In this document: positions 4,096 to 58,349 of the stretch, piece by piece
Position numbering within the stretch: position 1 is the stretch's first letter
Layout: each line of letters opens with the position of its first letter
IMG/VR virus record: IMGVR_UViG_3300028558_000016
Coordinates: 310,001 to 374,000 of that record
Direction: 5' to 3' (one strand)
Length of the DNA stretch: 64,000 nucleotides
Program-made: the position numbers and the translations under genes
The notes under the pieces: model-generated
The model's input: only the letters and a program-made list of their open reading frames with translations
Databases searched by the model: none
Told to the model about the DNA's origin: nothing

Positions 4096-4575
4096 ATGGA
4101 AAAACAAGTAAAAATATCTCAGTCTGTTGCCATCTTGATTGATGGCAACAACATTGAGATCAGCATACATAAGGATGCAGAGAAAGATAACGTGATGTGT
4201 GATTTCGATAATCTCGTTCCCAAGCTTATTGGCGACAGATCATTAAATCGCTTGGTGTACTTCAGAGAAGGAAAAAGCATCTCGCCTAAATTGGCAGACA
4301 GACTCCATAAATTATTTTATGGAGTTGTTAAGCCATGCAGGAAGAATGCTGACATTCGTTTAACCATTGAAGCCATACAACTTGCAAACAAAGTGGACAC
4401 AATAATAATTATGAGTGGAGATTCTGATTACATTGAGCTTGTTCAACATTTGCAATCACAGGGATTAAGAGTTGAAATAGCCGGAGTCCAATCAAGCACT
4501 TCAAAGTCATTGATTGAAGCGGCCGATTTCTTCCATCCAATAACTAAAGACGATTGGTTCACATTTAAAAATTAA
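4096..4575 (+). CDS. NYN/LabA-DUF88 PIN-like domain protein
   Basis: ILIDGNN, ADIRL, SGDSDY, LIEAADFF motifs. Confidence 0.9.
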   Translation: MEKQVKISQSVAILIDGNNIEISIHKDAEKDNVMCDFDNLVPKLIGDRSLNRLVYFREGKSISPKLADRLHKLFYGVVKPCRKNADIRLTIEAIQLANKVDTIIIMSGDSDYIELVQHLQSQGLRVEIAGVQSSTSKSLIEAADFFHPITKDDWFTFKN

Positions 4576-4580
4576 TTGAA

Positions 4581-4898
4581 ATGAAGCAAGACGAAGAAGA
4601 AGACCAAATCATTTGTATTTGTTCAAAAGAAAATTCGGCTCATACCATTGGTATAAGAGTTCCATGCCGTGGTCCAGGCTGTAATGCTCAGCTTTGGCTG
4701 AGTGACAGCACTATTAATAGAATTAAAAAGGAAAAAACGGATGTTGATTTAACGAAAACACCTCCTACCCCATTGTGTATGGATTGTGGATTGAAGGCTT
4801 TGAAAAATTCAAAGGATTTTAAAATAGCTCCACCAACCACCGAACAGATGGAAGAAATATTAAAGGCAATGACAGAAATCGATGCTCAACAAAGATGA
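4581..4898 (+). CDS. Hypothetical Cys-rich (Zn-binding) protein
   Basis: CxxxxC and CxxC motifs. Confidence 0.55.
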   Translation: MKQDEEEDQIICICSKENSAHTIGIRVPCRGPGCNAQLWLSDSTINRIKKEKTDVDLTKTPPTPLCMDCGLKALKNSKDFKIAPPTTEQMEEILKAMTEIDAQQR

Positions 4899-5515: not shown

Positions 5516-5917
5516 ATGAGAGTATTAGTAATGGGACCACCTGAAAAAGAGTCCATCAAAAAAGTAAAAGAATTCGCAGAGAGCCATGTTTTAAACTTCG
5601 ATGATCTGCTTGATATTAAAAATGGCGCTGAACCTTTTGTTGGAAACAGAAAAGGACATTCTTGTATCATCCCGCAAGATTTCAGAATTGTGTTTTCTGT
5701 TGAAATGCATCCAAGAAAAGATGGAAAAGGATTCACAAAATTAAGAGTGATGTCGATGTCAGTTCCTGCTGAGGGAAAACTTCCGAGTGTTGAAGCCGTT
5801 CAAATGGTTTTACCTGAGCTTGGATTCACTTCAAAATTTGAAGACTCTTATGTTACAATGGAGAATGATGCAAAAGGAGAACCTGTTGCCATAGTAGTAA
5901 TGGAAGAATTCAAATAG
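5516..5917 (+). CDS. Hypothetical protein (TAG stop)
   Basis: ORF in operon context. Confidence 0.6.
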   Translation: MRVLVMGPPEKESIKKVKEFAESHVLNFDDLLDIKNGAEPFVGNRKGHSCIIPQDFRIVFSVEMHPRKDGKGFTKLRVMSMSVPAEGKLPSVEAVQMVLPELGFTSKFEDSYVTMENDAKGEPVAIVVMEEFK

Positions 5918-6858: not shown

Positions 6859-7361
6859 ATAAGCTCGAATATAGAATGTATGGAATAGTTCCTTACAACA
6901 TTTCAGAAATACAAAAAGGAATCCAATTTGGACATGCTGTTGTAGAATACTCGTTGAAGTATTTTAAGAACGAAGACTTTCAACAGTGGGCCAAGAAGCA
7001 CAAAACATTCATGGTTATGAATGGAGGAACAACCAATATGGGAGAAGGAACAATTCAAGGAAGACCCGATTGGATGGTTGAAGAACTTAAAGGGTCATTA
7101 AATAAATACGCCGATTTACTTTCCAAAAATAAAATCAAATGCGCTTATTTCTTTGAGCCAGACTTAAATGATGCTTTAACTGCCGCGGTATTTCTTGCAG
7201 ATGAAAGAGTTTTCGACAAGATTAAATATCCTGATTATGTTCCTCTTTCTTTTGATTTAGCAAAAAATGATCCACAACACGAGAAAGAATGGGTCAAATC
7301 TATAGGAGGAAAACAAAATGTTTTCCTTCGTGAATTCATATCTAAACTAAGATTTGCATGA
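6855..7361 (+). CDS. PTH2-like (peptidyl-tRNA hydrolase type 2 fold) phage protein
   Basis: QKGIQFGHAVVEY ... FFEPDLNDALTA pattern. Confidence 0.6.
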   Translation: MNKLEYRMYGIVPYNISEIQKGIQFGHAVVEYSLKYFKNEDFQQWAKKHKTFMVMNGGTTNMGEGTIQGRPDWMVEELKGSLNKYADLLSKNKIKCAYFFEPDLNDALTAAVFLADERVFDKIKYPDYVPLSFDLAKNDPQHEKEWVKSIGGKQNVFLREFISKLRFA

Positions 7362-8044
7362 AAACGACAGACAAATACGTATTATTTTATACTGAGGTAT
7401 TTTCTCAGTGGCATCCTTCCAATTTTGAAGTAGGAGGTAAAAAATTCTGCACAGCAGAACAATTCATGATGTATTTCAAAGCATTAACGTTCGGTGATCA
7501 AGAGATTGCAGACAAGATATTAGCAACAAATAGTCCACGTGAACAAAAGAAACTTGGACGCGCTGTTAAAGGATTTGATGCTGTTAAATGGAATGCAATA
7601 GCCAAGGAAGTTGTATTCAAAGGAAACAGAGCTAAGTTTCAACAGAATCCAGAAATGTTCGAACAATTAATGGCAACAGGACACAAAGAACTTGTTGAAG
7701 CTTCCCCTTATGATACTATATGGGGAATAGGCTTTGATGAAAATGCTCCTGAAGCTCTTGATAAGTCAACATGGAATGGAACAAATTGGCTTGGCGAAGT
7801 ATTAACAAAGCTTAGAGATGTTCTTAGAAGAGAACAGACAATTCAAAACATAGTGAAACATGGTGAAGCTGAATTGGAAAAATTTGCCAGGGATTATCCA
7901 AATGACATAGGACGATTGTATGAAAGCTATAAAAAATTGAAAACACAATCTTGGTCTGAAGATTTTTTAAGAGGATATTTAGGAGCTATAACAGATTTAA
8001 TTATTATTAAAAAAGGACATTGGGGAGACTCATTTGTAAAATAA
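7358..8044 (+). CDS. NADAR/YbiA family protein
   Basis: FSQW, TAEQFMM, KKLGRAV, LVEASPYDTIWGIG, GTNWLG motifs. Confidence 0.92.
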   Translation: MKTTDKYVLFYTEVFSQWHPSNFEVGGKKFCTAEQFMMYFKALTFGDQEIADKILATNSPREQKKLGRAVKGFDAVKWNAIAKEVVFKGNRAKFQQNPEMFEQLMATGHKELVEASPYDTIWGIGFDENAPEALDKSTWNGTNWLGEVLTKLRDVLRREQTIQNIVKHGEAELEKFARDYPNDIGRLYESYKKLKTQSWSEDFLRGYLGAITDLIIIKKGHWGDSFVK

Positions 8045-8681: not shown

Positions 8682-9605
8682 GTGAAAAGATTCCACGATT
8701 ATAGCACATTCAACGGCCTTGAAAATCTAAAACAGATTGTTGCCAAGAAAGATCCTTCCATGAGCGAAGACCTCATGAAGGCACTATTTCCATTAAGAGA
8801 TAAGAACATTGGCAAAACATTGAAGGACATCATAAAGAGATTTGAAAAATCCGCTGAATACGATACACCGAACAAATGGTTCAGTCCAAACAAGTATAAC
8901 ACTTTTATGGAATACTTTCAAAGAGGATTAACCGACAAGAAGAAAGAAGAAATAGAAGCAACCATAGATCAATATCTCATGGTCATGCCTTCTGAATCAA
9001 ACATTGAATCAATAGGAAATTTCTCAGACACTTCATCGATATTAAGATTGAAGAAACCGACTAAAGACGTAGTTAAGGATTTAATGGATTTTGGAATAAG
9101 TGATGTGAGCACATTAAACTTTATAAGCCTAAAGCTTCTCAAATGTTATTACCACAGGGTGCATTGCCCAGTAAGCGGAACTATACAAAAGATAACATTC
9201 ATTGGAAGAGAAGAACCGTTGTTTGGAGACAATTCCCTATGGGTGGTTGAATTCAATTCAGAAGAAGGAAGAATTTACATGCTTGTAGTTGGAGAACTTT
9301 CTATACAGGATTTTAATTTCAACTTCAAAGAAGGAGACAAGGTTAACAAATTTGAAGAGCTCGGAAAATTCAATTGGGGTTCTCAGCTCGTTTTAATATA
9401 TGCAAAAGATTCATTCGTAAGCGAACCGTTGATCATAGAAAAGGAGAAATATTTTGTTGGTGATGGAATATTTAATAAGACAAAAATAGTTCAAGGCGAT
9501 ATTCTTAATTCAATGCCAATTGACCAGATAGGAAATGGACAAAGAAACGGAACAATATACGGAGATGATATTTTAAAAGCACCAACAGGAGCAAACATAT
9601 TTTAA
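8682..9605 (+). CDS. Phosphatidylserine decarboxylase-like protein
   Basis: F..YFQR.L, YYHRVHCPVSG, ELGKFNWGSQLVL (GxFxxGS autocleavage motif); GTG start. Confidence 0.7.
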   Translation: MKRFHDYSTFNGLENLKQIVAKKDPSMSEDLMKALFPLRDKNIGKTLKDIIKRFEKSAEYDTPNKWFSPNKYNTFMEYFQRGLTDKKKEEIEATIDQYLMVMPSESNIESIGNFSDTSSILRLKKPTKDVVKDLMDFGISDVSTLNFISLKLLKCYYHRVHCPVSGTIQKITFIGREEPLFGDNSLWVVEFNSEEGRIYMLVVGELSIQDFNFNFKEGDKVNKFEELGKFNWGSQLVLIYAKDSFVSEPLIIEKEKYFVGDGIFNKTKIVQGDILNSMPIDQIGNGQRNGTIYGDDILKAPTGANIF

Positions 9606-10520: not shown

Positions 10521-10549
10521 TAATTTCTGACTAATAAGAAATTTGAATG

Positions 10550-10580
10550 AACCCGGTGGAAACATCGGGTTTTTTATTTT
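10550..10580 (+). terminator. Attenuator terminator
   Basis: AACCCGGTG-GAAA-CATCGGGTT + T tract; 5' arm CCCGGT also complementary to ACCGGG (10507-10512) in the leader. Confidence 0.85.
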
Positions 10581-10588
10581 ATACACAT

Positions 10589-10671
10589 GCCCATGTGGCG
10601 GAATTGGTAGACGCGCCGGTCTTAGGAACCGGTGCCTTTAAGGCGTGCAGGTTCGAGTCCTGTCATGGGTA
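10589..10671 (+). tRNA. tRNA-Leu(TAG)
   Basis: Cloverleaf, anticodon arm CCGGT-CTTAGGA-ACCGG, long variable arm. Confidence 0.95.
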
Positions 10672-10752
10672 CAACGTGGTGAAAGTACATTCAGACTGTA
10701 CCATCAGATTTTAGCTACTGATGAAGCATTTGTGGTGATGCTGCTGCGAATT

Positions 10753-10839
10753 GGTGAGATGTCCGAGTGGTTTAAGGAGCAACCCTGGAAAGGTTGTATA
10801 CGGGAAACCGTATCGTGGGTTCGAATCCCACTCTCACCG
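10753..10839 (+). tRNA. tRNA-Ser(GGA)
   Basis: CAACC-CTGGAAA-GGTTG, long variable arm, G73. Confidence 0.95.
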
Positions 10840-10849
10840 CAAATAAAAT

Positions 10850-10934
10850 GGAAGGTTGGTAGAGCGGTCTATTGCACCAGTCTTGAAAACTGGAGATCCT
10901 ACGGGGTCCGTGAGTTCGAATCTCACACCTTCCG
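10850..10934 (+). tRNA. tRNA-Ser(TGA)
   Basis: CCAGT-CTTGAAA-ACTGG, long variable arm, G73. Confidence 0.95.
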
Positions 10935-10939
10935 CAATT

Positions 10940-11027
10940 GGAGAGCTACTCAAGTTGGTTAAGAGGCGCGTTTGCTAAACGTGTAGGACGAGAAATCGTT
11001 GGGTGGGTTCGAACCCCACGCTCTCCG
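10940..11027 (+). tRNA. tRNA-Ser(GCT)
   Basis: CGCGT-TTGCTAA-ACGTG, long variable arm. Confidence 0.95.
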
Positions 11028-11038
11028 CAGAAAATTCT

Positions 11039-11121
11039 GCCCCCATGGTGGAATTGGTAGACACGCAGGACTTAAAATCCTGTGCCCTTAGGGCGTACGA
11101 GTTCGAGTCTCGTTGGGGGTA
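11039..11121 (+). tRNA. tRNA-Leu(TAA)
   Basis: CAGGA-CTTAAAA-TCCTG. Confidence 0.95.
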
Positions 11122-11128
11122 CATAAAT

Positions 11129-11210
11129 GCCGAGTTGGCGGAATTGGTAGACGCGCTGGTCTCAAACACCAGTGACGAAAGTCGTGTGGGTTCGAGTCCC
11201 ACACTCGGTA
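11129..11210 (+). tRNA. tRNA-Leu(CAA)
   Basis: CTGGT-CTCAAAC-ACCAG. Confidence 0.95.
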
Positions 11211-11226
11211 CAAGAAGAAGAATAAA

Positions 11227-12690
11227 ATGGAAAATGATAAAAAATATTGCTTGGTGATGTTTCCTTATCCGTCTGGAGATGGATTGCACATTGGACATTG
11301 CTACAACTACTTGATAGTTGATAGCTATTGTCGTTGGATGAAGAGAAAAGGAATTGAAGTGTTTCAACCATTTGGTTATGACGCTTTCGGTTTGCCTGCG
11401 GAGAATTATGCGATCAAGCATAACAGAGATCCAAAAGAAGTCACCTATGAAAACATAGAAAATTTCAGAAGGCAGATGAAGAGATTGGATACTAATTATG
11501 AAGAGAAGTTAATTACAGCTGATCCATCTTATTTCAAATGGACACAATGGTTGTTCACAAAGATGTTGGAGAAGGGAATTGCTTACAAGAAATTTCATCC
11601 AGTAAACTTTTGTCCATCTTGCGCAACAGTGATTGCCAATGAGCAGGTGAAGGAAGGAAAATGTGAGAGATGCAATTCAGTTGTTGAGATGAAAAACTTG
11701 AATCAATGGTTCTTCAGAATAACAGACTACACAGATAGGTTGATCAAGAACTTGCAATGGTTGGATTATCCCGAGAAAACCAAGAAGCAACAATTACATT
11801 GGTTGGAGAAGATGAAAGAAAACAAGATCGATTGGTGTGTGTCAAGACAGAGAAAATGGGGATGTCCAATTCCTGTTGAAGGAGAGGAAGATACTTTGGA
11901 CACATTTGTTGACAGCTCATTTTACTACTTGAGATTCTTGACGGATTCTGAAGATGAATTCTTGCCAAGAGAAAAATATAAGCAGGTTGATTTGTACGTC
12001 GGAGGAAATGAACATGCTTGCATGCATTTGATTTATGCAAGATTTGTGAACATGTTCTTGTATGACTTGGGAATTGTTGAACAAGAAGAACCGTTCAAGA
12101 AGTTGATTCATCAGGGAATGATCAAGATGAATGGAACAAAGATGTCCAAGTCTATCGGCAATGTTGTTAATCCGGATGGGTATGATCCAGATGAATTGAG
12201 ATTTTACTTGATGTTCATTGGACATTATTTTGATGGCGGAGATTGGAACGATCAAAACATTGTTGGCATAAGAAAATTCTTTGCACGATGGGATAAGCTT
12301 ACTTTTAGAGAAGCAAAGGAAGGAATTGAATCTATGGATTTGACTGAATTTGAAAACCAGATCGATGGTTATGTGAAAGCTTTCAAGTTCAATAAGGTTG
12401 TTAGTTCATTCATGGAATTTTACAACAATAATAGCAGCAGAAACTTTGACAAGGAAACCAGATTGAAGTTGAGAAGAATGTTGGAGTGTTTTGCGCCAAC
12501 AAGATTTTCTAAAGATGAAAGGCCTCCAGTTGGCATGGATGAATTAAGAAGAAAATCCAATGAGTTGTCTGAGAACGTAAACAAGATTGAAGTAATGGTT
12601 AATAAAATTTTTAAAGATGTTGAACAAAAAGAAAATATCACCGGAATATCCGAGAATACCTCACTTGATGGGGAAGTCAAATCTGTATGA
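11227..12690 (+). CDS. leuS: Minimal leucyl-tRNA synthetase (no CP1 editing domain)
   Basis: MFPYPSG-LHIGH, GYDAFGLPAEN, DWCVSRQRKWG, DTFVDSS, GGNEHA, KMSKS; only 487 aa. Confidence 0.9.
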   Translation: MENDKKYCLVMFPYPSGDGLHIGHCYNYLIVDSYCRWMKRKGIEVFQPFGYDAFGLPAENYAIKHNRDPKEVTYENIENFRRQMKRLDTNYEEKLITADPSYFKWTQWLFTKMLEKGIAYKKFHPVNFCPSCATVIANEQVKEGKCERCNSVVEMKNLNQWFFRITDYTDRLIKNLQWLDYPEKTKKQQLHWLEKMKENKIDWCVSRQRKWGCPIPVEGEEDTLDTFVDSSFYYLRFLTDSEDEFLPREKYKQVDLYVGGNEHACMHLIYARFVNMFLYDLGIVEQEEPFKKLIHQGMIKMNGTKMSKSIGNVVNPDGYDPDELRFYLMFIGHYFDGGDWNDQNIVGIRKFFARWDKLTFREAKEGIESMDLTEFENQIDGYVKAFKFNKVVSSFMEFYNNNSSRNFDKETRLKLRRMLECFAPTRFSKDERPPVGMDELRRKSNELSENVNKIEVMVNKIFKDVEQKENITGISENTSLDGEVKSV

Positions 12691-13321
12691 CGATGACATT
12701 GAGATCAATGTTGAGTTAGGGTTTGATGCCTTTGTACAAGAGAAGGTTGATGGAGCAAACTGTGGAATCAGTTGGTTCGATGGACCCATTCTCAGAAACA
12801 GAACCCATGTGTTAAGAAAGGGATTTGAAAGAGACACTCCAGCAAAGAAACAATTTGTTCCAGCTTGGAATTGGTTGCATGAAAGAGAAGATGACTTGAA
12901 GGAGATGATGAAGAAGTGGAATGGACAGATAACTGTTTATGGAGAGTGGATGCTTGCAAAACATTCTATTGGATATGAGAAGCTTCCAGATTATTTTCTT
13001 GCTTATGACATTTGGTCGTGTGAAGAAAACAAGTTTGTTTCTCCGAAGGAATGCAAGGAACTTTTGAATGGGACTGGCATAAGATGGATCGAAGCAGAAA
13101 GAATAAGCATTCAATCGTTCTCTGATTTGAAGTCAGTTCTTGATGTTCCCTCTAAGTACAGAGATGGAATTAAAGAAGGAATAGTTATCAAGAAAACTGA
13201 CGAAGACGATAAGTGGATAGAGAAGACTTTCAAGGTTGTTAGAAAAGATTTTGAAAGGGCTGATGAAAGCTGGAATAAGAAAAAGCTTGAAAAGAATAAG
13301 CTGATAAAGAGGAGTGCCTGA
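12617..13321 (+). CDS. RNA ligase (ATP-dependent nucleotidyltransferase)
   Basis: YPRIPHL, QEKVDGAN (motif I), YGEW, FLAYDI, EGIVIK. Confidence 0.85.
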   Translation: MLNKKKISPEYPRIPHLMGKSNLYDDDIEINVELGFDAFVQEKVDGANCGISWFDGPILRNRTHVLRKGFERDTPAKKQFVPAWNWLHEREDDLKEMMKKWNGQITVYGEWMLAKHSIGYEKLPDYFLAYDIWSCEENKFVSPKECKELLNGTGIRWIEAERISIQSFSDLKSVLDVPSKYRDGIKEGIVIKKTDEDDKWIEKTFKVVRKDFERADESWNKKKLEKNKLIKRSA

Positions 13322-13393
13322 GTGGCTGAAAGGACCGGTCTCGAAAACCGGCACACCCAAAAGGTGTCGTGAGTTCGAATCTCACCTCCTCTG
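13308..13393 (+). tRNA. tRNA-Ser(CGA)
   Basis: CCGGT-CTCGAAA-ACCGG; overlaps the end of the RNA ligase ORF. Confidence 0.93.
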
Positions 13394-13432
13394 CATTTTT
13401 TAATTTGATGATTTTTTTGTAAATTCACTATC

Positions 13433-13738
13433 ATGAATGATGAAGATAAAAAAATAAAGGGATCATTGTTTTTCTTGTACATCGGCAAGCTTAAAGAATT
13501 GGGTTTGATAGAAGGTGGCGCAGGAGATTTGACCATGAAAGGTTTTGACATTGCCATTGATGCCTATAACAGTGGACATAGATTGTCAGATGAGGAGATT
13601 AGTAATTTTCTCGAAGCCGCTCCTGGAATGGACGATGACGACACAATAGAGGCAGCATTTGGAATGATAGCCAAGATGCAAGAAATTGGATTTGATGGAA
13701 TGAAAGAATTGGTTGAACGAGTAAAGAAAACATTATGA
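13433..13738 (+). CDS. Hypothetical protein
   Basis: ORF. Confidence 0.6.
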   Translation: MNDEDKKIKGSLFFLYIGKLKELGLIEGGAGDLTMKGFDIAIDAYNSGHRLSDEEISNFLEAAPGMDDDDTIEAAFGMIAKMQEIGFDGMKELVERVKKTL

Positions 13739-14445
13739 AAAAGAAATTAGTGGTGTTTAGCGGTGCAGGAGTTTCTGCTGAGAGCGGAATTCCTACATTC
13801 AGAGATTCAAATGGTCTTTGGGAAAACCATAAGATGGAAGATGTTGCTACTCCAGAAGGATGGGAGAAAAACAGAGAGCTTGTTCTCAACTTCTACAATC
13901 TTATGAGAACGAAACTCAAAGCAGTTGTTCCGAATAAAGCTCACAATATAATTGCAGAGCTTGAAGAACATTTTGAAGTTACAGTCATCACACAAAACAT
14001 AGATGACTTGCATGAGAGAAGCGGCTCAAAGAAGGTCATACATCTTCATGGAGAATTAATGAAGAGCAGAAGCACATTTAATCCAAATCTAAAATACGAG
14101 TGTACTGGAAATATAAACATAGGTGACAAATGTGAGAAAGGTTCTCAATTGAGGCCTGACATAGTTTGGTTTCATGAAAATGTTTATCACCTTGACACTG
14201 CGGCTGAATTGGTAGAACAGTGCGATATTCTTCTTGTTGTTGGAACTTCATTAAATGTTTGGCCTGCAGCAGGATTGTTATATGTGACGAAACCGGAAAC
14301 TGAAATATATTGCATTGATCCAAAAACAGTTGTTGGAAGTGATATTCAAGTTACTCACATAAAGAAGAAAGCGAGTGAAGGGATGGAGAAATTTAAAAAG
14401 ATTATTCTCGAGAAAAAAGATAAGAAAGAAAATTGCTGTTTATAA
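13735..14445 (+). CDS. cobB: Sir2/CobB NAD-dependent deacylase
   Basis: GAGVSAESGIPTFR, TQNIDDLHE, HLHG, LRPDIVWF, VGTS. Confidence 0.95.
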   Translation: MKKKLVVFSGAGVSAESGIPTFRDSNGLWENHKMEDVATPEGWEKNRELVLNFYNLMRTKLKAVVPNKAHNIIAELEEHFEVTVITQNIDDLHERSGSKKVIHLHGELMKSRSTFNPNLKYECTGNINIGDKCEKGSQLRPDIVWFHENVYHLDTAAELVEQCDILLVVGTSLNVWPAAGLLYVTKPETEIYCIDPKTVVGSDIQVTHIKKKASEGMEKFKKIILEKKDKKENCCL

Positions 14446-14449
14446 TAAT

Positions 14450-14531
14450 GCCCAGGTGTTGGAATTGGTAGACAAGCACGGTTGAGGGCCGTGTGCAGTA
14501 ATGCGTAGGGGTTCGAGTCCCCTTCTGGGTA
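14450..14531 (+). tRNA. tRNA-Leu(GAG)
   Basis: CACGG-TTGAGGG-CCGTG. Confidence 0.95.
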
Positions 14532-14532
14532 C

Positions 14533-16461: not shown

Positions 16462-16503
16462 AATCTTTTTAATTTTAATTGATTTTTAGTATATTTGTTC
16501 TCT

Positions 16504-17238
16504 GTGATAGAGATAAAATGTATATTAAAATACGATCCTGTTCCATTATCTGGAAAAGCAGAAACCATGTGCAAACCTTGGTGGATGATCGCAACATGCG
16601 AAGGAGATCTCACTGAATATTATGCATGGCTTCTTAAAAAACGAACAGGATTAATTCTCCAACGCCCTGCATGGGGCGCACATATCTCAGTCATAAGAGG
16701 AGAAGAACCACCCAACAAAGAATTATGGAAAAAATACCAGGACAAAGAAGTCACTTTGCTCTATGATCCAAACGTCAGAACAAATGGAGATCATTGGTGG
16801 ATGAGAGTCCATTGCAACGAACTTCTTGACATAAGAGAAGAATTAGGTCTTCCAAGATTTGGAGCATTAACTTTACACCTCACGTTAGGAAGACCAATCC
16901 CAAGACACGAAGAAGCATCAGATTATTTCCATACAGTTTTTAAATCATTCGCTCCATCGGCGCCAATAAGACCATACATGACACAAGAAGAAGCTTTAAA
17001 GAATTTGTCTTTGCCTCCAATGGAAGTAAAGCATAAAGAATTAAAAACACCTGAACATTCAGACTCTATGTTCAGAAAGGAATGTCCAAACTGTGAGACT
17101 GGATTATTGATGATGAAAAGAAATCAGTCAACGCTCGCTCTTGAAAAAGATGATAATTGCACTTATTGTGGAAGACGATTCACTTACACTGACATAAAAG
17201 AAAACTCAGTAATATTAGAATATAATGAAAAAGCTTGA
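16504..17238 (+). CDS. 2H-phosphoesterase-like protein with C-terminal Zn ribbon
   Basis: HISV and HLTL motifs; CPNC..CTYC; probable GTG start. Confidence 0.55.
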   Translation: MIEIKCILKYDPVPLSGKAETMCKPWWMIATCEGDLTEYYAWLLKKRTGLILQRPAWGAHISVIRGEEPPNKELWKKYQDKEVTLLYDPNVRTNGDHWWMRVHCNELLDIREELGLPRFGALTLHLTLGRPIPRHEEASDYFHTVFKSFAPSAPIRPYMTQEEALKNLSLPPMEVKHKELKTPEHSDSMFRKECPNCETGLLMMKRNQSTLALEKDDNCTYCGRRFTYTDIKENSVILEYNEKA

Positions 17239-48012: not shown

Positions 48013-48020
48013 ATTTGCAG

Positions 48021-48092
48021 AACTCCAAGTGGGGATCGAACCCACGACCAAAGGTTTTAGAGACCTACGTTCTACCACTGAACTATTGGAGC
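48021..48092 (-). tRNA. Amber suppressor tRNA (anticodon CUA)
   Basis: GCTCCAA-TA-GTTC AGTGGTA GAAC-G-TAGGT CTCTAAA ACCTT-TGGTC-GTGGG TTCGATC CCCAC-TTGGAGT-T. Confidence 0.9.
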
Positions 48093-54548: not shown

Positions 54549-55451
54549 ATGGACAACTTGTATAATAGTAATGGTTTGATTTTTTGGTCAGAAGCGGAGA
54601 TAAAACTTCGTGAGATGTTCGAGAACTATTTCGTTCAAAAACTGAAGACCAATCTCAAATCTCAGAACAGAGCATTCGACCTTTATAAGTGCGAAGCTCC
54701 ATTATTGACTCCGGTCGATTTAATAAACCCGAATTATACCGAAGAGGATGTTTGGATTCAAGCCAATTTAAGAGGTGCAATGCCGGTTGTTCGTTATGCT
54801 GAAAAGAAATCGAGCATTGACGATGACATGGAAAAATTAATGTCATTGAGCAAAGAACACATGCGTTCCGAAGAGGATAGTTATTACAAACGCATGCTTG
54901 AATTGAACGATCAAATTACAAATGGAAAATTGAATATGGACCTTGCCATTGAAATGGGTGCGGTATATACTGAGATGTATCCTAATCATTCATTAGTATT
55001 AAGGCCTGAAACCACAATGGGAAGTTATGCTTATGCAAGACATTTGCTTAATCCGCACAATGCAGTTAAGATAATGCCACCATTGGTTGTATATCAACAT
55101 GGAAAATCATTTAGAAGAGAACAGGATCAGCCCACAAAATACATGAGGCTTAAGGAATTCTATCAATTGGAATTCCAGATACTATATTCACCTTCTACCA
55201 AGAACGACTATTCTCTAACGTTGATCCCTACAGTAAAACAAATGATAGAGGATATGATTGGTCCGTGTCATGTGGAAGATTCAGACAGACTTCCAAGCTA
55301 TGCTGAATGGACAAGAGATGTCATCTGCGATAAAACAGGAATGGAAGTTTGTTCAATGTCAAAAAGAACTGACTACGAGAACATGAACGTCATTGAGGTG
55401 GCAATAGGAACCGACCGGTGCATATATAATTTCAATTTGAAGAATGGATAA
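54549..55451 (+). CDS. GlyRS-like class II aaRS catalytic core without anticodon-binding domain
   Basis: LRPETTMG, GKSFRRE..RLKEFYQLEFQ (motif 2), VIEVAIGTDR (motif 3); ends 10 aa later. Confidence 0.8.
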   Translation: MDNLYNSNGLIFWSEAEIKLREMFENYFVQKLKTNLKSQNRAFDLYKCEAPLLTPVDLINPNYTEEDVWIQANLRGAMPVVRYAEKKSSIDDDMEKLMSLSKEHMRSEEDSYYKRMLELNDQITNGKLNMDLAIEMGAVYTEMYPNHSLVLRPETTMGSYAYARHLLNPHNAVKIMPPLVVYQHGKSFRREQDQPTKYMRLKEFYQLEFQILYSPSTKNDYSLTLIPTVKQMIEDMIGPCHVEDSDRLPSYAEWTRDVICDKTGMEVCSMSKRTDYENMNVIEVAIGTDRCIYNFNLKNG

Positions 55452-58275: not shown

Positions 58276-58349
58276 GGCTTGGCCGGAATCAGGGGACTGC
58301 GGATTCTAAACCCGCTGAACCGTGGGTTCGACTCCCACCCAGGCTACCA
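58276..58349 (+). tRNA. Second CUA-anticodon tRNA with degenerate D-arm
   Basis: GGCTTGG/CCAGGCT-A-CCA acceptor, GCGGA-TTCTAAA-CCCGC arm, GTGGG-TTCGACT-CCCAC T-arm. Confidence 0.7.

What the first reader, a model, noticed from the sequence alone, without database searches (positions are those of the whole stretch)
11227..12690. Naturally minimised LeuRS lacking CP1 editing and other inserted domains
Seen: only about 8 residues lie between QQLHWL and DWCVSRQR, where bacterial LeuRS has the roughly 190-aa CP1 editing domain. The segment after GCPIP is reduced to about 5 residues, and the Leu-specific insert before KMSKS is absent. The protein is 487 aa versus more than 800 typically, with HIGH and KMSKS intact. 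Inference: an error-prone, urzyme-like synthetase that would also be insensitive to CP1-targeting inhibitors, possibly specific for the phage tRNA-Leu set.
Basis: partly seen in the sequence, partly recalled or inferred. Interest (0 to 1): 0.6.

Follow-up and report, generated by a model that had tools for sequence, protein, structure and literature searches.

The report
Minimal phage leucyl-tRNA synthetase family
A 482-kb soil phage carries a stripped-down leucyl-tRNA synthetase with no proofreading domain and no C-terminal tRNA-gripping domain; it belongs to a large, conserved, apparently undescribed family found almost only in huge phages, so it is a natural test of how little of this enzyme is needed to work.

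Summary
ORF 11227-12690 (+, 487 aa) is a bacterial-type LeuRS with HIGH, KMSKS, a four-cysteine ZN finger and all checked synthetic-site residues intact. An 8-residue linker replaces the CP1 editing domain. The roughly 50-aa insertion after GxPIP and the leucine-specific domain are also gone.

- The C-terminal tRNA-binding domain, the last part of the anticodon-binding domain and about 30 N-terminal residues are also absent.
- Residues 425-487 are a variable tail that runs into the next gene.
- The protein is not a one-off. It belongs to a tight family of mostly 410-430 aa proteins, found in 58 IMG/VR loci on contigs up to 608 kb and in at least 120 protein clusters. The family is under strong purifying selection (dN/dS about 0.06) and is almost absent from cellular genomes.

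No CP1, LSD or C-terminal-domain gene lies elsewhere in the complete phage genome.

The gene starts 15 nt after a tRNA-Leu gene, and several other synthetase genes in this genome also follow tRNA genes for their amino acid.

Most likely it is an active, editing-free LeuRS that recognises the tRNA acceptor end. However, deleting the C-terminal domain abolishes charging in the E. coli and Thermus enzymes, so charging remains unproven.

"Urzyme-like" is wrong: it is a complete LeuRS body. This is a new variant of a known kind; the closest precedents are Mycoplasma mobile LeuRS and the Tupanvirus mini-AlaRS.

The parts
10589..10672 (+). tRNA-Leu(UAG), 84 nt, A73, G1-U72; first gene of the tRNA array upstream of the synthetase
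   Evidence: ARAGORN; Rfam tRNA 58.3 bits. A terminator-like hairpin lies just upstream at 10549-10572.
10753..11028 (+). Three tRNA-Ser genes (GGA, UGA, GCU), class II, G73; context only, within the same array
   Evidence: ARAGORN
11039..11122 (+). tRNA-Leu(UAA), 84 nt, A73
   Evidence: ARAGORN; Rfam
11129..11211 (+). tRNA-Leu(CAA), 83 nt, A73; ends 15 nt before the synthetase start codon; CCA not encoded
   Evidence: ARAGORN; sequence
11227..12690 (+). Mini-LeuRS ORF, 487 aa, ATG to TGA
   Evidence: TIGR00396 E 6.6e-120. Best solved relative is 3ziu, M. mobile LeuRS, E 1.8e-92. AlphaFold model has pLDDT 85.6. dN/dS 0.058 against L018.
11287..11298 (+). HIGH motif (H21-I-G-H24)
11611..11673 (+). 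ZN finger, C129-x2-C132-x13-C146-E-R148-C149. N138 and E139 (E. coli 168/169, within the 167-169 tRNA-contacting stretch) and R148 (ATP gamma-phosphate contact) are conserved.
   Evidence: mapped with the residue roles given in PMC13454842
11806..11829 (+). 8-residue linker EKMKENKI in place of the ~190-aa CP1 editing domain (E. coli 225-416). Most relatives have only 4 residues here.
11875..11889 (+). VEGEE, in place of the ~49-aa insertion after GxPIP (E. coli 437-485; Thermus 437-486)
12124..12153 (+). KMNG-T linker in place of the leucine-specific domain (E. coli 574-617), followed by KMSKS (residues 305-309)
   Evidence: M. mobile LeuRS has GKDG at this place (PMC3643597).
12157..12498 (+). 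Shortened helical anticodon-binding domain (residues ~311-424), ending at the family's conserved CFAP motif. It corresponds to E. coli residues up to ~777.
   Evidence: Secondary structure of the model; VIA-align ranges. Pfam Anticodon_1 was not detected.
12499..12687 (+). Lineage-specific C-terminal tail (residues 425-487). Predicted as one long helix (437-471) followed by a disordered end. Slightly acidic. Absent from most relatives. Its last 74 nt overlap the RNA ligase ORF.
12617..13321 (+). RNA ligase gene (PF09414, E 3e-27), overlapping the end of the synthetase gene; context suggesting tRNA or RNA repair
13308..13394 (+). tRNA-Ser(CGA); context
14450..14532 (+). tRNA-Leu(GAG), 83 nt, A73; fourth and last tRNA-Leu gene of the genome

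Best explanation
The ORF encodes a working, editing-free minimal leucyl-tRNA synthetase of a huge phage.

A bacterial leuS captured by an ancestor of this phage clade was cut down in steps to the LeuRS body: Rossmann catalytic domain, ZN finger and a short helical bundle.

Proposed mechanism:
- It activates leucine to Leu-AMP in an ordinary LeuRS synthetic site.
- It transfers leucine to tRNA-Leu. The tRNA is recognised mainly at the acceptor end (A73, CCA, with the ZN finger and catalytic core) rather than at the elbow or variable arm.
- It has no post-transfer proofreading.
- It is probably made from the same transcript as the upstream tRNA-Leu/Ser array and helps keep leucine decoding going during infection.

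Shown: identity as LeuRS, intact active-site residues, the domain losses, purifying selection, the phage-specific family, and linkage to tRNA-Leu genes.

Inferred: leucine activation, tRNA charging without the C-terminal domain, lack of editing and the resulting error rate, and co-transcription.
For: 1. Identity. TIGR00396 matches at E 6.6e-120, against 7.5e-44 for the next family. The predicted structure superposes on Thermus, E. coli and M. mobile LeuRS at Z 33-35, rmsd 2.3-2.7 A, over ~428 residues. The tree places it inside bacterial LeuRS.

2. Active site. Counterparts of Y43, H49/H52, D80, N168/E169, R178, W223, E532/H533, M536, Y540 and KMSKS are conserved in it and in 8 relatives. Residue roles are from PMC13454842.

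3. Selection. pN 0.10 against pS 0.69, dN/dS 0.058, in the comparison with L018. At least 120 clusters share 63-87% identity with no broken members seen.

4. Distribution. 58 IMG/VR loci on contigs up to 607,744 bp. A 64.5% identical copy sits in the published 634,780-bp phage LR745206.1. Among 185,579 species genomes (best 80 hits kept) there is only one mini-type hit, on a 2.9-kb scaffold.

5. No split partner. PF13603 and TIGR00396 find no CP1, LSD or C-terminal-domain piece anywhere in the CheckV-complete genome.

6. Gene order.
- The gene starts 15 nt after tRNA-Leu(CAA).
- tRNA-Leu genes lie upstream on the same strand in L009, L011, L013, L014 and L018 and in 11 of 56 IMG/VR loci. In those flanks Leu makes up 46 of 109 tRNAs.
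- In this genome the Pro, His, Trp, Arg, Tyr and Asp synthetase genes also follow tRNA genes for their amino acid, and the GluRS gene directly follows tRNA-Gln.

7. All four phage tRNA-Leu have A73 and G18G19.

8. Precedents.
- M. mobile LeuRS works with a nonapeptide in place of CP1 and a tetrapeptide in place of the LSD (PMC3643597).
- Tupanvirus mini-AlaRS lacks both the editing domain and the elbow-binding C-Ala domain, yet charges tRNA and a microhelix and rescues yeast (PMC10036535).
Against: - The family lacks the C-terminal domain. Its deletion abolished aminoacylation in Thermus and E. coli LeuRS (PMC3561953). M. mobile LeuRS and all ten other CP1-less LeuRS representatives I examined keep that domain.
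- The LSD and CP1, which also contact the tRNA acceptor end in E. coli (PMC13454842), are gone as well, so few known tRNA contacts remain.
- An archaeal LeuRS paralogue, Sulfolobaceae LeuRS-I, binds tRNA-Leu and makes Leu-AMP but cannot aminoacylate (PMC9437257).
- The score is below the curated LeuRS cut-off, and Pfam Anticodon_1 is not detected.
- tRNA-Leu adjacency is absent from most of the more distant relatives (45 of 56 loci).
- There are no expression data: no RNA run holds the sequence.
- No biochemical evidence exists for any member.
Confidence: 0.6

Rival explanations
1. It makes Leu-AMP but cannot charge tRNA efficiently alone. Either it needs a tRNA-binding helper supplied in trans by the phage or host, for example a Trbp111-like protein, or it has a non-canonical role. 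Possible roles are sequestering tRNA-Leu, sensing leucine, or handing activated leucine to another acceptor.
For: - The C-terminal domain is missing, and its deletion abolishes charging in E. coli and Thermus LeuRS.
- Sulfolobaceae LeuRS-I is a natural LeuRS paralogue that activates leucine and binds tRNA without charging it.
- This genome encodes a free-standing tRNA_bind (PF01588) protein at genome 290795-291028 (-), E 5.8e-15.
- The MetRS-like gene also lacks the C-terminal part of the long MetRS model (residues 4-457 match positions 5-478 of 648). In many bacteria that part holds a tRNA_bind domain (recollection).
Against: - Only 5 of 22 related huge-phage records carry a PF01588 gene, 2 of the 8 that are at least 90% complete.
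- No protein-coding neighbour is conserved across 7 loci.
- The residues that position A76 and C74-C75 (E532/H533, N168/E169) remain conserved. That is unnecessary if no tRNA is charged.
- Linkage to tRNA-Leu genes.
- The Tupanvirus mini-AlaRS precedent shows that an elbow-binding domain can be dispensable.
Confidence: 0.25
2. The enzyme has drifted to another substrate: another amino acid (Met, Ile, norvaline or similar), or non-Leu tRNAs. The latter could include the class-II-shaped tRNAs with Gln, Glu or Met anticodons and A73 that this genome carries. It would then deliberately alter decoding during infection.
For: - LeuRS does not read the anticodon (established knowledge).
- The editing domain is gone.
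- The genome holds 82-92-nt tRNAs with a long variable arm and with Asn, Met, Lys, Glu, Gln, Trp and His anticodons. Several have A73. Long tRNA-Gln(UUG) recurs in L013 and L015.
- E. coli W177, which closes the leucine pocket, is E147 here.
Against: - The leucine-pocket residues that were checked are conserved.
- E at position 177 is the commonest state in full-length relatives as well, 114 of 136, so it does not signal a changed pocket.
- The long tRNA-Gln have U1-A72, which I recall as a GlnRS identity feature (recollection, not tested here). They sit next to GluRS and TyrRS genes, not next to the LeuRS gene.
- No test of charging was possible.
Confidence: 0.08
3. It is a decaying relic of a captured leuS gene with no function.
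For: Large deletions of four domains. The C-terminal tail varies among near relatives and runs into the next gene.
Against: - dN/dS 0.058.
- Catalytic motifs are invariant across 37 aligned members.
- Dozens of intact copies sit in genomes that are up to about 45% diverged at the protein level.
- The predicted fold is confident (pLDDT 85.6).
Confidence: 0.02

Closest known systems
Mycoplasma mobile LeuRS (PDB 3ZIU)
   Same: - Bacterial-type LeuRS in which CP1 is replaced by a short linker: 9 residues (KEEIDGKIT) there, 8 residues (EKMKENKI) here.
- The leucine-specific domain is replaced by about 4 residues: GKDG there, KMNG here.
- It is the best sequence and Foldseek match (E 1.8e-92; E 2.9e-35).
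- It is active in aminoacylation, has no CP1 post-transfer editing, and is linked to mistranslation (PMC3643597, PMC3553970).
   Different: - M. mobile LeuRS keeps the ~40-50-aa insertion after GxPIP, where residues 274-316 are unmatched.
- It keeps a C-terminal portion: the model aligns only to residues 33-554 of 621.
- It is the sole LeuRS of a cell.
- The phage protein is about 200 residues shorter and is an accessory gene of a virus.
- Common descent of the two deletions was not tested. Other CP1-less lineages are scattered across the tree, which points to repeated independent loss.
Tupanvirus mini-AlaRS (PMC10036535)
   Same: A virus-encoded synthetase that has lost both its editing domain and its elbow-binding C-terminal tRNA-binding domain. 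It derives from a cellular enzyme by later domain loss. It was shown to be active through acceptor-stem recognition alone.
   Different: It is a class II AlaRS of a eukaryotic giant virus, in a different fold and family, and a single case. Here it is a class Ia LeuRS in bacteriophages, forming a large family, with no biochemistry.
Synthetase genes of huge phages (Al-Shayeb et al. 2020, PMC7162821)
   Same: - Huge phages carry up to 15 synthetases and up to 67 tRNAs, thought to charge phage tRNA variants.
- A 422-aa member of this very family is annotated 'Leucyl-tRNA synthetase' in one of that paper's GenBank supplements.
- LR745206.1, a 634,780-bp 'uncultured phage' record, holds a 64.5% identical copy. 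That this record comes from that study is my recollection, not a tool result.
   Different: I found no statement in that paper, in its held supplements or in the searched literature that the phage LeuRS lacks CP1, the LSD and the C-terminal domain.
LeuRS urzyme (designed ~130-aa catalytic core; PMC10450160, PMC12033045)
   Same: Both lack CP1 and other insertions and keep HIGH and KMSKS.
   Different: The phage protein is a complete natural LeuRS body of about 425 aa, with a ZN finger, the full Rossmann fold and a helical anticodon-binding domain. It is not an excerpt.
Aquifex aeolicus split alpha-beta LeuRS
   Same: A LeuRS whose parts are arranged unusually, which raises the idea that missing parts could be encoded elsewhere.
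   Different: No second subunit exists here. There is no match to the missing profile regions anywhere in the genome.
Sulfolobaceae LeuRS-I paralogue (as reviewed in PMC9437257)
   Same: A natural LeuRS with a disrupted CP1 and an aberrant C-terminus. It warns that such proteins may activate leucine and bind tRNA without charging it.
   Different: It is an archaeal-type enzyme that exists as a second copy beside a normal LeuRS in a cell. The phage family is bacterial-type and much more reduced.

Membership tests
Bacterial-type leucyl-tRNA synthetase (class Ia; TIGR00396) | HIGH and KMSKS signature motifs in a Rossmann-fold catalytic domain | tested here: met
   HIGH at 21-24 and KMSKS at 305-309. 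PF00133 E 3.6e-38. The fold superposes on LeuRS structures at Z 33-35.
Bacterial-type leucyl-tRNA synthetase (class Ia; TIGR00396) | LeuRS-specific synthetic-site and ZN-finger residues (E. coli Y43, D80, E169, R178, W223, E532, H533, M536, Y540) | tested here: met
   All are conserved in P0001 and in nearly all of the 8 relatives checked (M536 is Ala in one). Only W177 differs; it is E here, which is also the commonest state in full-length relatives.
Bacterial-type leucyl-tRNA synthetase (class Ia; TIGR00396) | Whole-protein score at or above the curated equivalog cut-off (548.4 bits) | tested here: not met
   401.6 bits in four stretches. The shortfall is due to the missing domains.
Bacterial-type leucyl-tRNA synthetase (class Ia; TIGR00396) | CP1 editing domain (PF13603) inserted in the catalytic domain | tested here: not met
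   No Pfam hit in the protein. E. coli 225-416 has no counterpart. PF13603 is absent from the whole genome, while the control found it in 14 of 14 genomes.
Bacterial-type leucyl-tRNA synthetase (class Ia; TIGR00396) | Helical anticodon-binding domain after KMSKS | tested here: inconclusive
   Pfam Anticodon_1 is not detected. However, the model has a helical bundle at 321-427 that superposes on E. coli residues up to 777, with segments 691-707, 736-743 and 772 onward lacking.
Bacterial-type leucyl-tRNA synthetase (class Ia; TIGR00396) | C-terminal tRNA-binding domain (~60 aa) that contacts the tRNA elbow and variable arm | tested here: not met
   Most family members end at CFAPxx. There is no match to profile positions 748-843 anywhere in the genome.
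Bacterial-type leucyl-tRNA synthetase (class Ia; TIGR00396) | Phylogenetic placement among bacterial LeuRS | tested here: met
   The family forms one clade (support 100) nested among bacterial LeuRS. Its nearest relatives include the full-length proteins P0124 and P0134, which lie in bacterial housekeeping contexts.
Bacterial-type leucyl-tRNA synthetase (class Ia; TIGR00396) | Leucine activation and leucylation of tRNA-Leu | not testable with these tools
   Needs enzyme assays.
CP1-less minimal LeuRS of the Mycoplasma mobile type | CP1 replaced by a short peptide linker and the LSD replaced by a tetrapeptide | tested here: met
   An 8-residue linker and KMNG, against KEEIDGKIT and GKDG in M. 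mobile.
CP1-less minimal LeuRS of the Mycoplasma mobile type | Retains the insertion after GxPIP and the C-terminal tRNA-binding domain | tested here: not met
   Both are absent here. They are present in 3ziu and in 10 other CP1-less LeuRS representatives.
CP1-less minimal LeuRS of the Mycoplasma mobile type | Shared ancestry of the deletion with the Mycoplasma enzyme | not tested
   The M. mobile sequence could not be placed in the tree. The scattered positions of other CP1-less forms suggest independent losses.
Aminoacyl-tRNA synthetase urzyme | About 120-130 residues, holding only the ATP and amino-acid binding core without the ZN finger, the CP core or an anticodon-binding domain | tested here: not met
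   A conserved body of about 425 aa, with ZN finger and helical domain.
Split (heterodimeric) LeuRS | A second gene that encodes the missing part of the enzyme | tested here: not met
   Searches found none in the complete genome. No neighbouring protein is conserved.

The most novel reading that the evidence does not exclude
The mini-LeuRS is the core of a phage-owned decoding module built to be blind to the anticodon, to the tRNA elbow and to editing. Having shed every domain that checks the tRNA body or the amino acid, it would charge unconventional phage tRNAs that host enzymes handle poorly. These would include the variable-arm-less tRNA-Leu found beside it in relatives, and possibly the class-II-shaped A73 tRNAs with non-Leu anticodons in this genome. 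The phage could then run, or deliberately blur, leucine decoding independently of the host during infection.
Probability: 0.1. Interest if true: 0.85.

Novelty: new variant of a known kind. Interest (0 to 1): 0.6.

Why it matters
If active, this family would be by far the smallest natural LeuRS: about 410-425 aa, against about 620 in M. mobile and 860 in E. coli.

It would be the first LeuRS to work without the C-terminal tRNA-binding domain, whose deletion abolishes charging in the E. coli and Thermus enzymes. That would define the minimal functional LeuRS. It would also show a recognition mode based on the acceptor end, parallel to the Tupanvirus mini-AlaRS.

Other points of interest:
- The family is a natural series for studying stepwise loss of editing. 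Forms of 521-530 aa with a shrunken CP1 still exist in the same clade.
- It bears on whether huge phages tolerate or exploit mistranslation.
- It offers compact LeuRS/tRNA-Leu pairs as candidates for orthogonal translation systems.

If it is inactive in charging, it would be a widespread phage tRNA-synthetase-like protein with an unknown role, which is also worth knowing.

Tried and rejected
- Split enzyme. PF13603 and TIGR00396 searched in six frames over the whole 482-kb genome found no CP1, LSD or C-terminal-domain piece.
- Read-through of the stop to a longer protein. The stop is TGA, not TAG. Despite three tRNA(CUA) genes, the evidence for TAG recoding is weak: TAG ends 23 of 434 long ORFs, and only two ORF-TAG-ORF junctions exist. 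Only table 11 was used for all translations.
- Assembly artefact. Rejected by independent contigs.
- W177-to-E as a signature of CP1 loss. Rejected, because ER is the commonest state in full-length relatives.
- A conserved neighbouring partner protein. None was shared by four or more of 7 loci.
- A Trbp111-like helper in trans. One is present in this genome but in only 5 of 22 related records, so it is not a conserved partner. No complex prediction was run, because I do not claim that the two proteins bind.
- YbaK-type trans-editing factor. None found.
- T-box or other leader RNA before the gene. None found; only tRNAs were detected.
- Promoter scan. Not above chance.
- Universal adjacency to tRNA-Leu. 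Not true: 11 of 56 IMG/VR loci.
- Expression. No RNA run holds the stretch.
- Literature. No paper was found describing a phage LeuRS without CP1 or the C-terminal domain. The 2012 E. coli LeuRS-tRNA structure paper is not held, so detailed A73 contacts could not be checked.
Full report
**Setting**

The window is bases 310,001-374,000 of a 482,156-bp IMG/VR virus record. CheckV rates the record 100% complete. It has 36.8% G+C and 55 tRNA genes. Near-identical DNA occurs in several rhizosphere metagenomes.

The ORF in question runs from 11227 to 12690 on the + strand. It is 487 aa, starts at ATG and ends at TGA. Its start codon lies 15 nt after the end of tRNA-Leu(CAA). That tRNA is the last gene of an array holding Leu(UAG), three tRNA-Ser, Leu(UAA) and Leu(CAA). 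A tRNA-Ser(CGA) and the fourth tRNA-Leu(GAG) lie 0.6 and 1.8 kb downstream.

The protein matches the bacterial LeuRS model TIGR00396 at E 6.6e-120. The next best family is ValRS at 7.5e-44. The match is split into four stretches and scores 401.6 bits, below the curated 548.4-bit cut-off.

I took E. coli LeuRS from NC_000913 and aligned it with the protein. These E. coli segments have no counterpart:
- 1-31;
- 225-416, the CP1 editing domain;
- 437-485, the insertion after the GxPIP motif;
- 574-617, the leucine-specific domain (LSD);
- 691-707 and 736-743;
- everything from about 772 to the end.

The exact replacement linkers are EKMKENKI (residues 194-201), VEGEE (217-221) and KMNG (300-303). 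HMMER alignment to Thermus LeuRS shows the same gaps, with 232-419 and 436-487 missing.

Contigs assembled from three other samples cover the gene and all junctions with 0-1 differences and no indels. The architecture is therefore real.

First, the C-terminal tRNA-binding domain and the end of the anticodon-binding domain are missing. The AlphaFold model (pLDDT 85.6, pTM 0.80) superposes as follows:

| Model residues | Target | Target range | Z | rmsd (A) | Aligned |
|---|---|---|---|---|---|
| 2-434 | Thermus LeuRS | 28-796 | 35.2 | 2.4 | 425 |
| 1-433 | E. coli LeuRS | 30-777 | 33.5 | 2.7 | 428 |
| 1-432 | M. mobile LeuRS | 33-554 of 621 | 34.7 | 2.3 | 431 |

So the protein is the complete LeuRS body with every appended or inserted module removed. 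It is not an urzyme-like fragment.

Second, residues 425-487 are not part of the conserved protein.
- Most relatives end a few residues after the CFAP motif.
- Only the nearest relatives have tails, and these tails differ in length and sequence.
- The model makes the tail one long helix followed by disorder.
- The tail is slightly acidic.
- Its last 74 nt overlap the start of the next gene, an RNA ligase.

I read the tail as a lineage-specific extension into the neighbouring gene. This is inference.

**The active site is intact**

I used the residue roles described for E. coli LeuRS in PMC13454842. All of the following are conserved in this protein and in nearly all of the eight relatives checked (M536 is Ala in one):
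- Y43, H49/H52 (HIGH) and D80;
- N168/E169, within the 167-169 stretch of the ZN finger that contacts the tRNA;
- R178, the ATP gamma-phosphate contact;
- W223, E532/H533, M536 and Y540;
- KMSKS.

The ZN finger has four cysteines. The only difference is W177, which is E here. Glu-Arg is also the commonest state at positions 177-178 in full-length relatives, 114 of 136. It is therefore not linked to CP1 loss.

**It is one member of a large, phage-specific family**

- A search of 5.8 billion proteins returned at least 120 clusters at 63-87% identity. Nearly all are 410-450 aa, and some sit on contigs of 200-438 kb.
- At 50% clustering the whole mini family collapses to essentially one representative.
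- IMG/VR holds 58 loci on contigs up to 607,744 bp. Fifty-two encode mini proteins with matches of about 383-426 aa, and four encode a 521-530-aa form.
- A 64.5% identical copy lies in LR745206.1, a 634,780-bp 'uncultured phage' record. I recall this record as one of the huge phages of Al-Shayeb et al. 2020.
- A 422-aa member is annotated simply as leucyl-tRNA synthetase in a supplement of that paper.
- Among the best 80 hits in 185,579 species-representative genomes, only one is mini-type, and it sits on a 2.9-kb scaffold of a Bacteroidota MAG. All others are full-length cellular enzymes: Kiritimatiellales, Clostridium UBA4108, Peribacteria and Gemmatimonadetes, at 47-57% identity.
- Purifying selection is strong. 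Against the 83%-identical copy in L018, pN is 0.10, pS is 0.69 and dN/dS is 0.058.

**Origin**

In a maximum-likelihood tree, the mini forms and the 527-530-aa forms make one clade with support 100 on a long stem. This clade is nested among bacterial LeuRS. Its nearest relatives include full-length proteins that lie in bacterial housekeeping neighbourhoods with der, dnaG, rpoD and rsmB.

The 527-530-aa forms (P0095, P0123) already lack the insertion after GxPIP, the LSD and the C-terminal domain. They keep a shrunken CP1 of about 113-117 residues. This remnant retains the threonine-rich TTKPKT motif, the GTG motif and the aspartates corresponding to E. coli D342 and D345. It is predicted to fold with confidence (pLDDT 90.2). 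One of these forms branches at the base of the clade.

This fits stepwise reduction after capture of a bacterial leuS, with CP1 lost last. The root was not inferred, so the order of events is an inference.

Ten other CP1-less LeuRS representatives of 530-706 aa are scattered across the tree, each next to full-length enzymes. All ten keep the GxPIP insertion and the C-terminal domain. CP1 loss is thus recurrent, whereas loss of the C-terminal domain was seen only in the phage family.

**No missing piece elsewhere**

- PF13603 (CP1) finds nothing in six frames of the genome, while it is found in 14 of 14 control genomes.
- TIGR00396 matches only this gene and, weakly, the MetRS-like gene. Nothing covers profile positions 224-413, 428-484, 568-603 or 748-843.
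- No neighbouring protein is shared by four or more of 7 loci.
- A free-standing tRNA_bind (Trbp111-like) gene exists at genome 290795-291028. Only 5 of 22 related records have one.
- There is no YbaK-type trans-editing gene.

**Link to tRNA-Leu**

All four tRNA-Leu of this genome have the discriminator A73, described as the main LeuRS identity element (PMC3643597). They also have G18G19 and a G1-U72 pair.

tRNA-Leu genes lie upstream on the same strand at these distances from the synthetase start:
- 51 nt in L009;
- 45 nt in L018;
- 268 nt in L013;
- 1.3 kb in L014;
- 1.6 kb in L011.

In the systematic IMG/VR set only 11 of 56 loci have a tRNA-Leu within 3 kb. When tRNAs are present in the flanks, Leu makes up 46 of 109, always upstream and on the same strand. 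The linkage is therefore real but confined to part of the family.

No terminator-like hairpin and no leader RNA separates the array from the gene. Co-transcription is plausible but is inferred.

The same layout recurs in this genome:

| Synthetase gene | Size | Note | Follows cognate tRNA genes |
|---|---|---|---|
| ProRS | 376 aa | lacks the INS editing domain | yes |
| HisRS-like core | ~210-233 aa | no anticodon-binding domain | yes |
| TrpRS-like | 243 aa | shortened | yes |
| ArgRS-like | 401 aa | weak match | yes |
| TyrRS | 396 aa | normal length | yes |
| GluRS | 519 aa | normal length | follows tRNA-Gln |
| AspRS | 421 aa | normal length | yes |
| MetRS core | 468 aa | lacks the C-terminal part of the long MetRS model | no |
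| GlyRS-like | 300 aa | weak match | no |

**Mechanism**

The most likely reading is an active LeuRS. It would make Leu-AMP in a normal synthetic site and charge tRNA-Leu by recognising mainly the acceptor end, without post-transfer proofreading.

Two precedents make this credible:
- M. mobile LeuRS works with a nonapeptide instead of CP1 and a tetrapeptide instead of the LSD (PMC3643597). Its lack of editing is linked to misincorporation at Leu codons estimated as high as 1 in 200 (PMC3553970).
- The Tupanvirus mini-AlaRS has lost both its editing domain and its elbow-binding domain. It still charges tRNA and a microhelix and rescues yeast (PMC10036535).

The main objection is that deleting the C-terminal domain abolishes aminoacylation in Thermus and E. 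coli LeuRS (PMC3561953). In addition, an archaeal LeuRS paralogue with a damaged CP1 and C-terminus activates leucine and binds tRNA but does not charge it (PMC9437257).

My estimates are:
- about 0.6 for autonomous charging;
- 0.25 for a helper-dependent or non-canonical role;
- under 0.1 for changed substrate specificity;
- about 0.02 for a functionless relic.

Insensitivity to inhibitors that act in the CP1 pocket follows from the absence of the pocket. I see no ecological reason to think this drove the loss.

**Novelty**

CP1-less LeuRS and synthetases in huge phages are both known, and the gene has been auto-annotated as LeuRS. What appears undescribed is a conserved, phage-restricted LeuRS family reduced to the bare body. 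It lacks CP1, the GxPIP insertion, the LSD and the C-terminal domain, and CP1-remnant intermediates survive in the same clade. Literature searches found no description.

I class it as a new variant of a known kind, of solid interest to synthetase and phage biologists. The decisive experiments are straightforward.

Noticed in passing
Own genome outside the window (genome coordinates): 5778-5869, 6974-7059, 7373-7464, 124757-124843, 386605-386692, 387507-387591, 413915-413998, 414375-414464. Also L013:12731-12814, L013:12897-12987 and L015:8131-8212.: tRNAs of 82-92 nt with a long variable arm (class II shape) but with anticodons for Asn, Met, Lys, Glu, Gln, Trp and His. Most sit beside a normal-length tRNA for the same amino acid. 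Several have A73. The long tRNA-Gln(UUG) recurs in two related phages, with U1-A72. In bacteria only Leu, Ser and Tyr tRNAs normally have this shape. Who charges these is unknown.
   Followed up: partly
Related loci, for example L025:949-1654, L034:200-5241, L022:1803-2177, L020:2776-4962, L009:5874-5949 and L018:5794-5867: About 20 of 46 tRNA-Leu genes next to the mini-LeuRS in related phages are only 74-78 nt long. They have no long variable arm and nearly all have A73. Some keep a tRNA-Leu-like D-arm. Variable-arm-less tRNA-Leu beside a LeuRS that has lost its elbow and variable-arm binding domain may be connected.
   Followed up: partly
window 48020-48092 (-), 58276-58349 (+); genome 374278-374351: Three tRNA genes with a CUA anticodon (amber suppressors). 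TAG is the rarest stop, ending 23 of 434 long ORFs. Only two ORF-TAG-ORF junctions were found, at genome 147409 and 293268. There is no clear genome-wide recoding.
   Followed up: partly
window 54549-55451 (+); genome 393722-394852, 414484-415185, 415182-415913, 418300-419505, 401438-402844, 126571-127836, 387479-388669, 388782-390341: The phage encodes at least ten synthetase-like genes.
- Shortened: ProRS without the INS editing domain (376 aa), a HisRS catalytic core without anticodon-binding domain, TrpRS-like (243 aa), ArgRS-like (401 aa), GlyRS-like (300 aa) and a MetRS core (468 aa).
- Normal length: AspRS, TyrRS and GluRS.
- Seven of the ten (Leu, Pro, His, Trp, Arg, Tyr, Asp) sit just downstream of tRNA genes for their amino acid, and the GluRS gene directly follows tRNA-Gln.
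   Followed up: partly
L011:6001-7584; L071-L074 (matches 3001 to about 4563-4590); proteins P0095 and P0123: Members of the same clade, 521-530 aa long, keep a half-size CP1 of about 113-117 aa. The remnant retains the threonine-rich and GTG/Asp editing motifs and is predicted to fold with confidence (pLDDT 90.2). It is a possible intermediate in loss of editing, or a miniature editing domain.
   Followed up: partly
Proteins P0126, P0128, P0139, P0142, P0149, P0221, P0234, P0244, P0250, P0256: At least ten other metagenomic LeuRS lineages of 530-706 aa lack CP1 but keep the GxPIP insertion and the C-terminal domain. They are scattered among full-length enzymes in the tree, so CP1 loss looks recurrent beyond Mycoplasma. 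Their organisms were not identified.
   Followed up: partly
Protein P0100 (616 aa): One family member carries an N-terminal fusion of about 190 aa with dephospho-CoA kinase / AAA_18-type nucleotide kinase Pfam hits.
   Followed up: no
window 7358-8044, 8682-9605, 12617-13321, 13735-14445, 16495-17238: The genes around the tRNA and LeuRS cluster are:
- a NADAR domain protein;
- a phosphatidylserine-decarboxylase-like protein;
- an RNA ligase (PF09414) that overlaps the LeuRS tail by 74 nt;
- a Sir2-family protein;
- a weak 2H-phosphoesterase match.
This is a mix suggestive of RNA repair and NAD/ADP-ribose metabolism. PS-decarboxylase-like and Sir2 genes are also near the LeuRS gene in L018.
   Followed up: partly
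Genome 290795-291028 (-), outside the window; L161-L165 in relatives: A free-standing tRNA_bind (PF01588, Trbp111-like) gene in a 121-aa open frame. It is found in 5 of 22 related huge-phage records. It could be a general tRNA-binding helper for the trimmed synthetases, but it is not consistently present.
   Followed up: partly
window 10549-10572 (+): A terminator-like hairpin of 10 pairs followed by a T-run, immediately before the first tRNA-Leu of the array. No such site lies between the array and the LeuRS gene.
   Followed up: no
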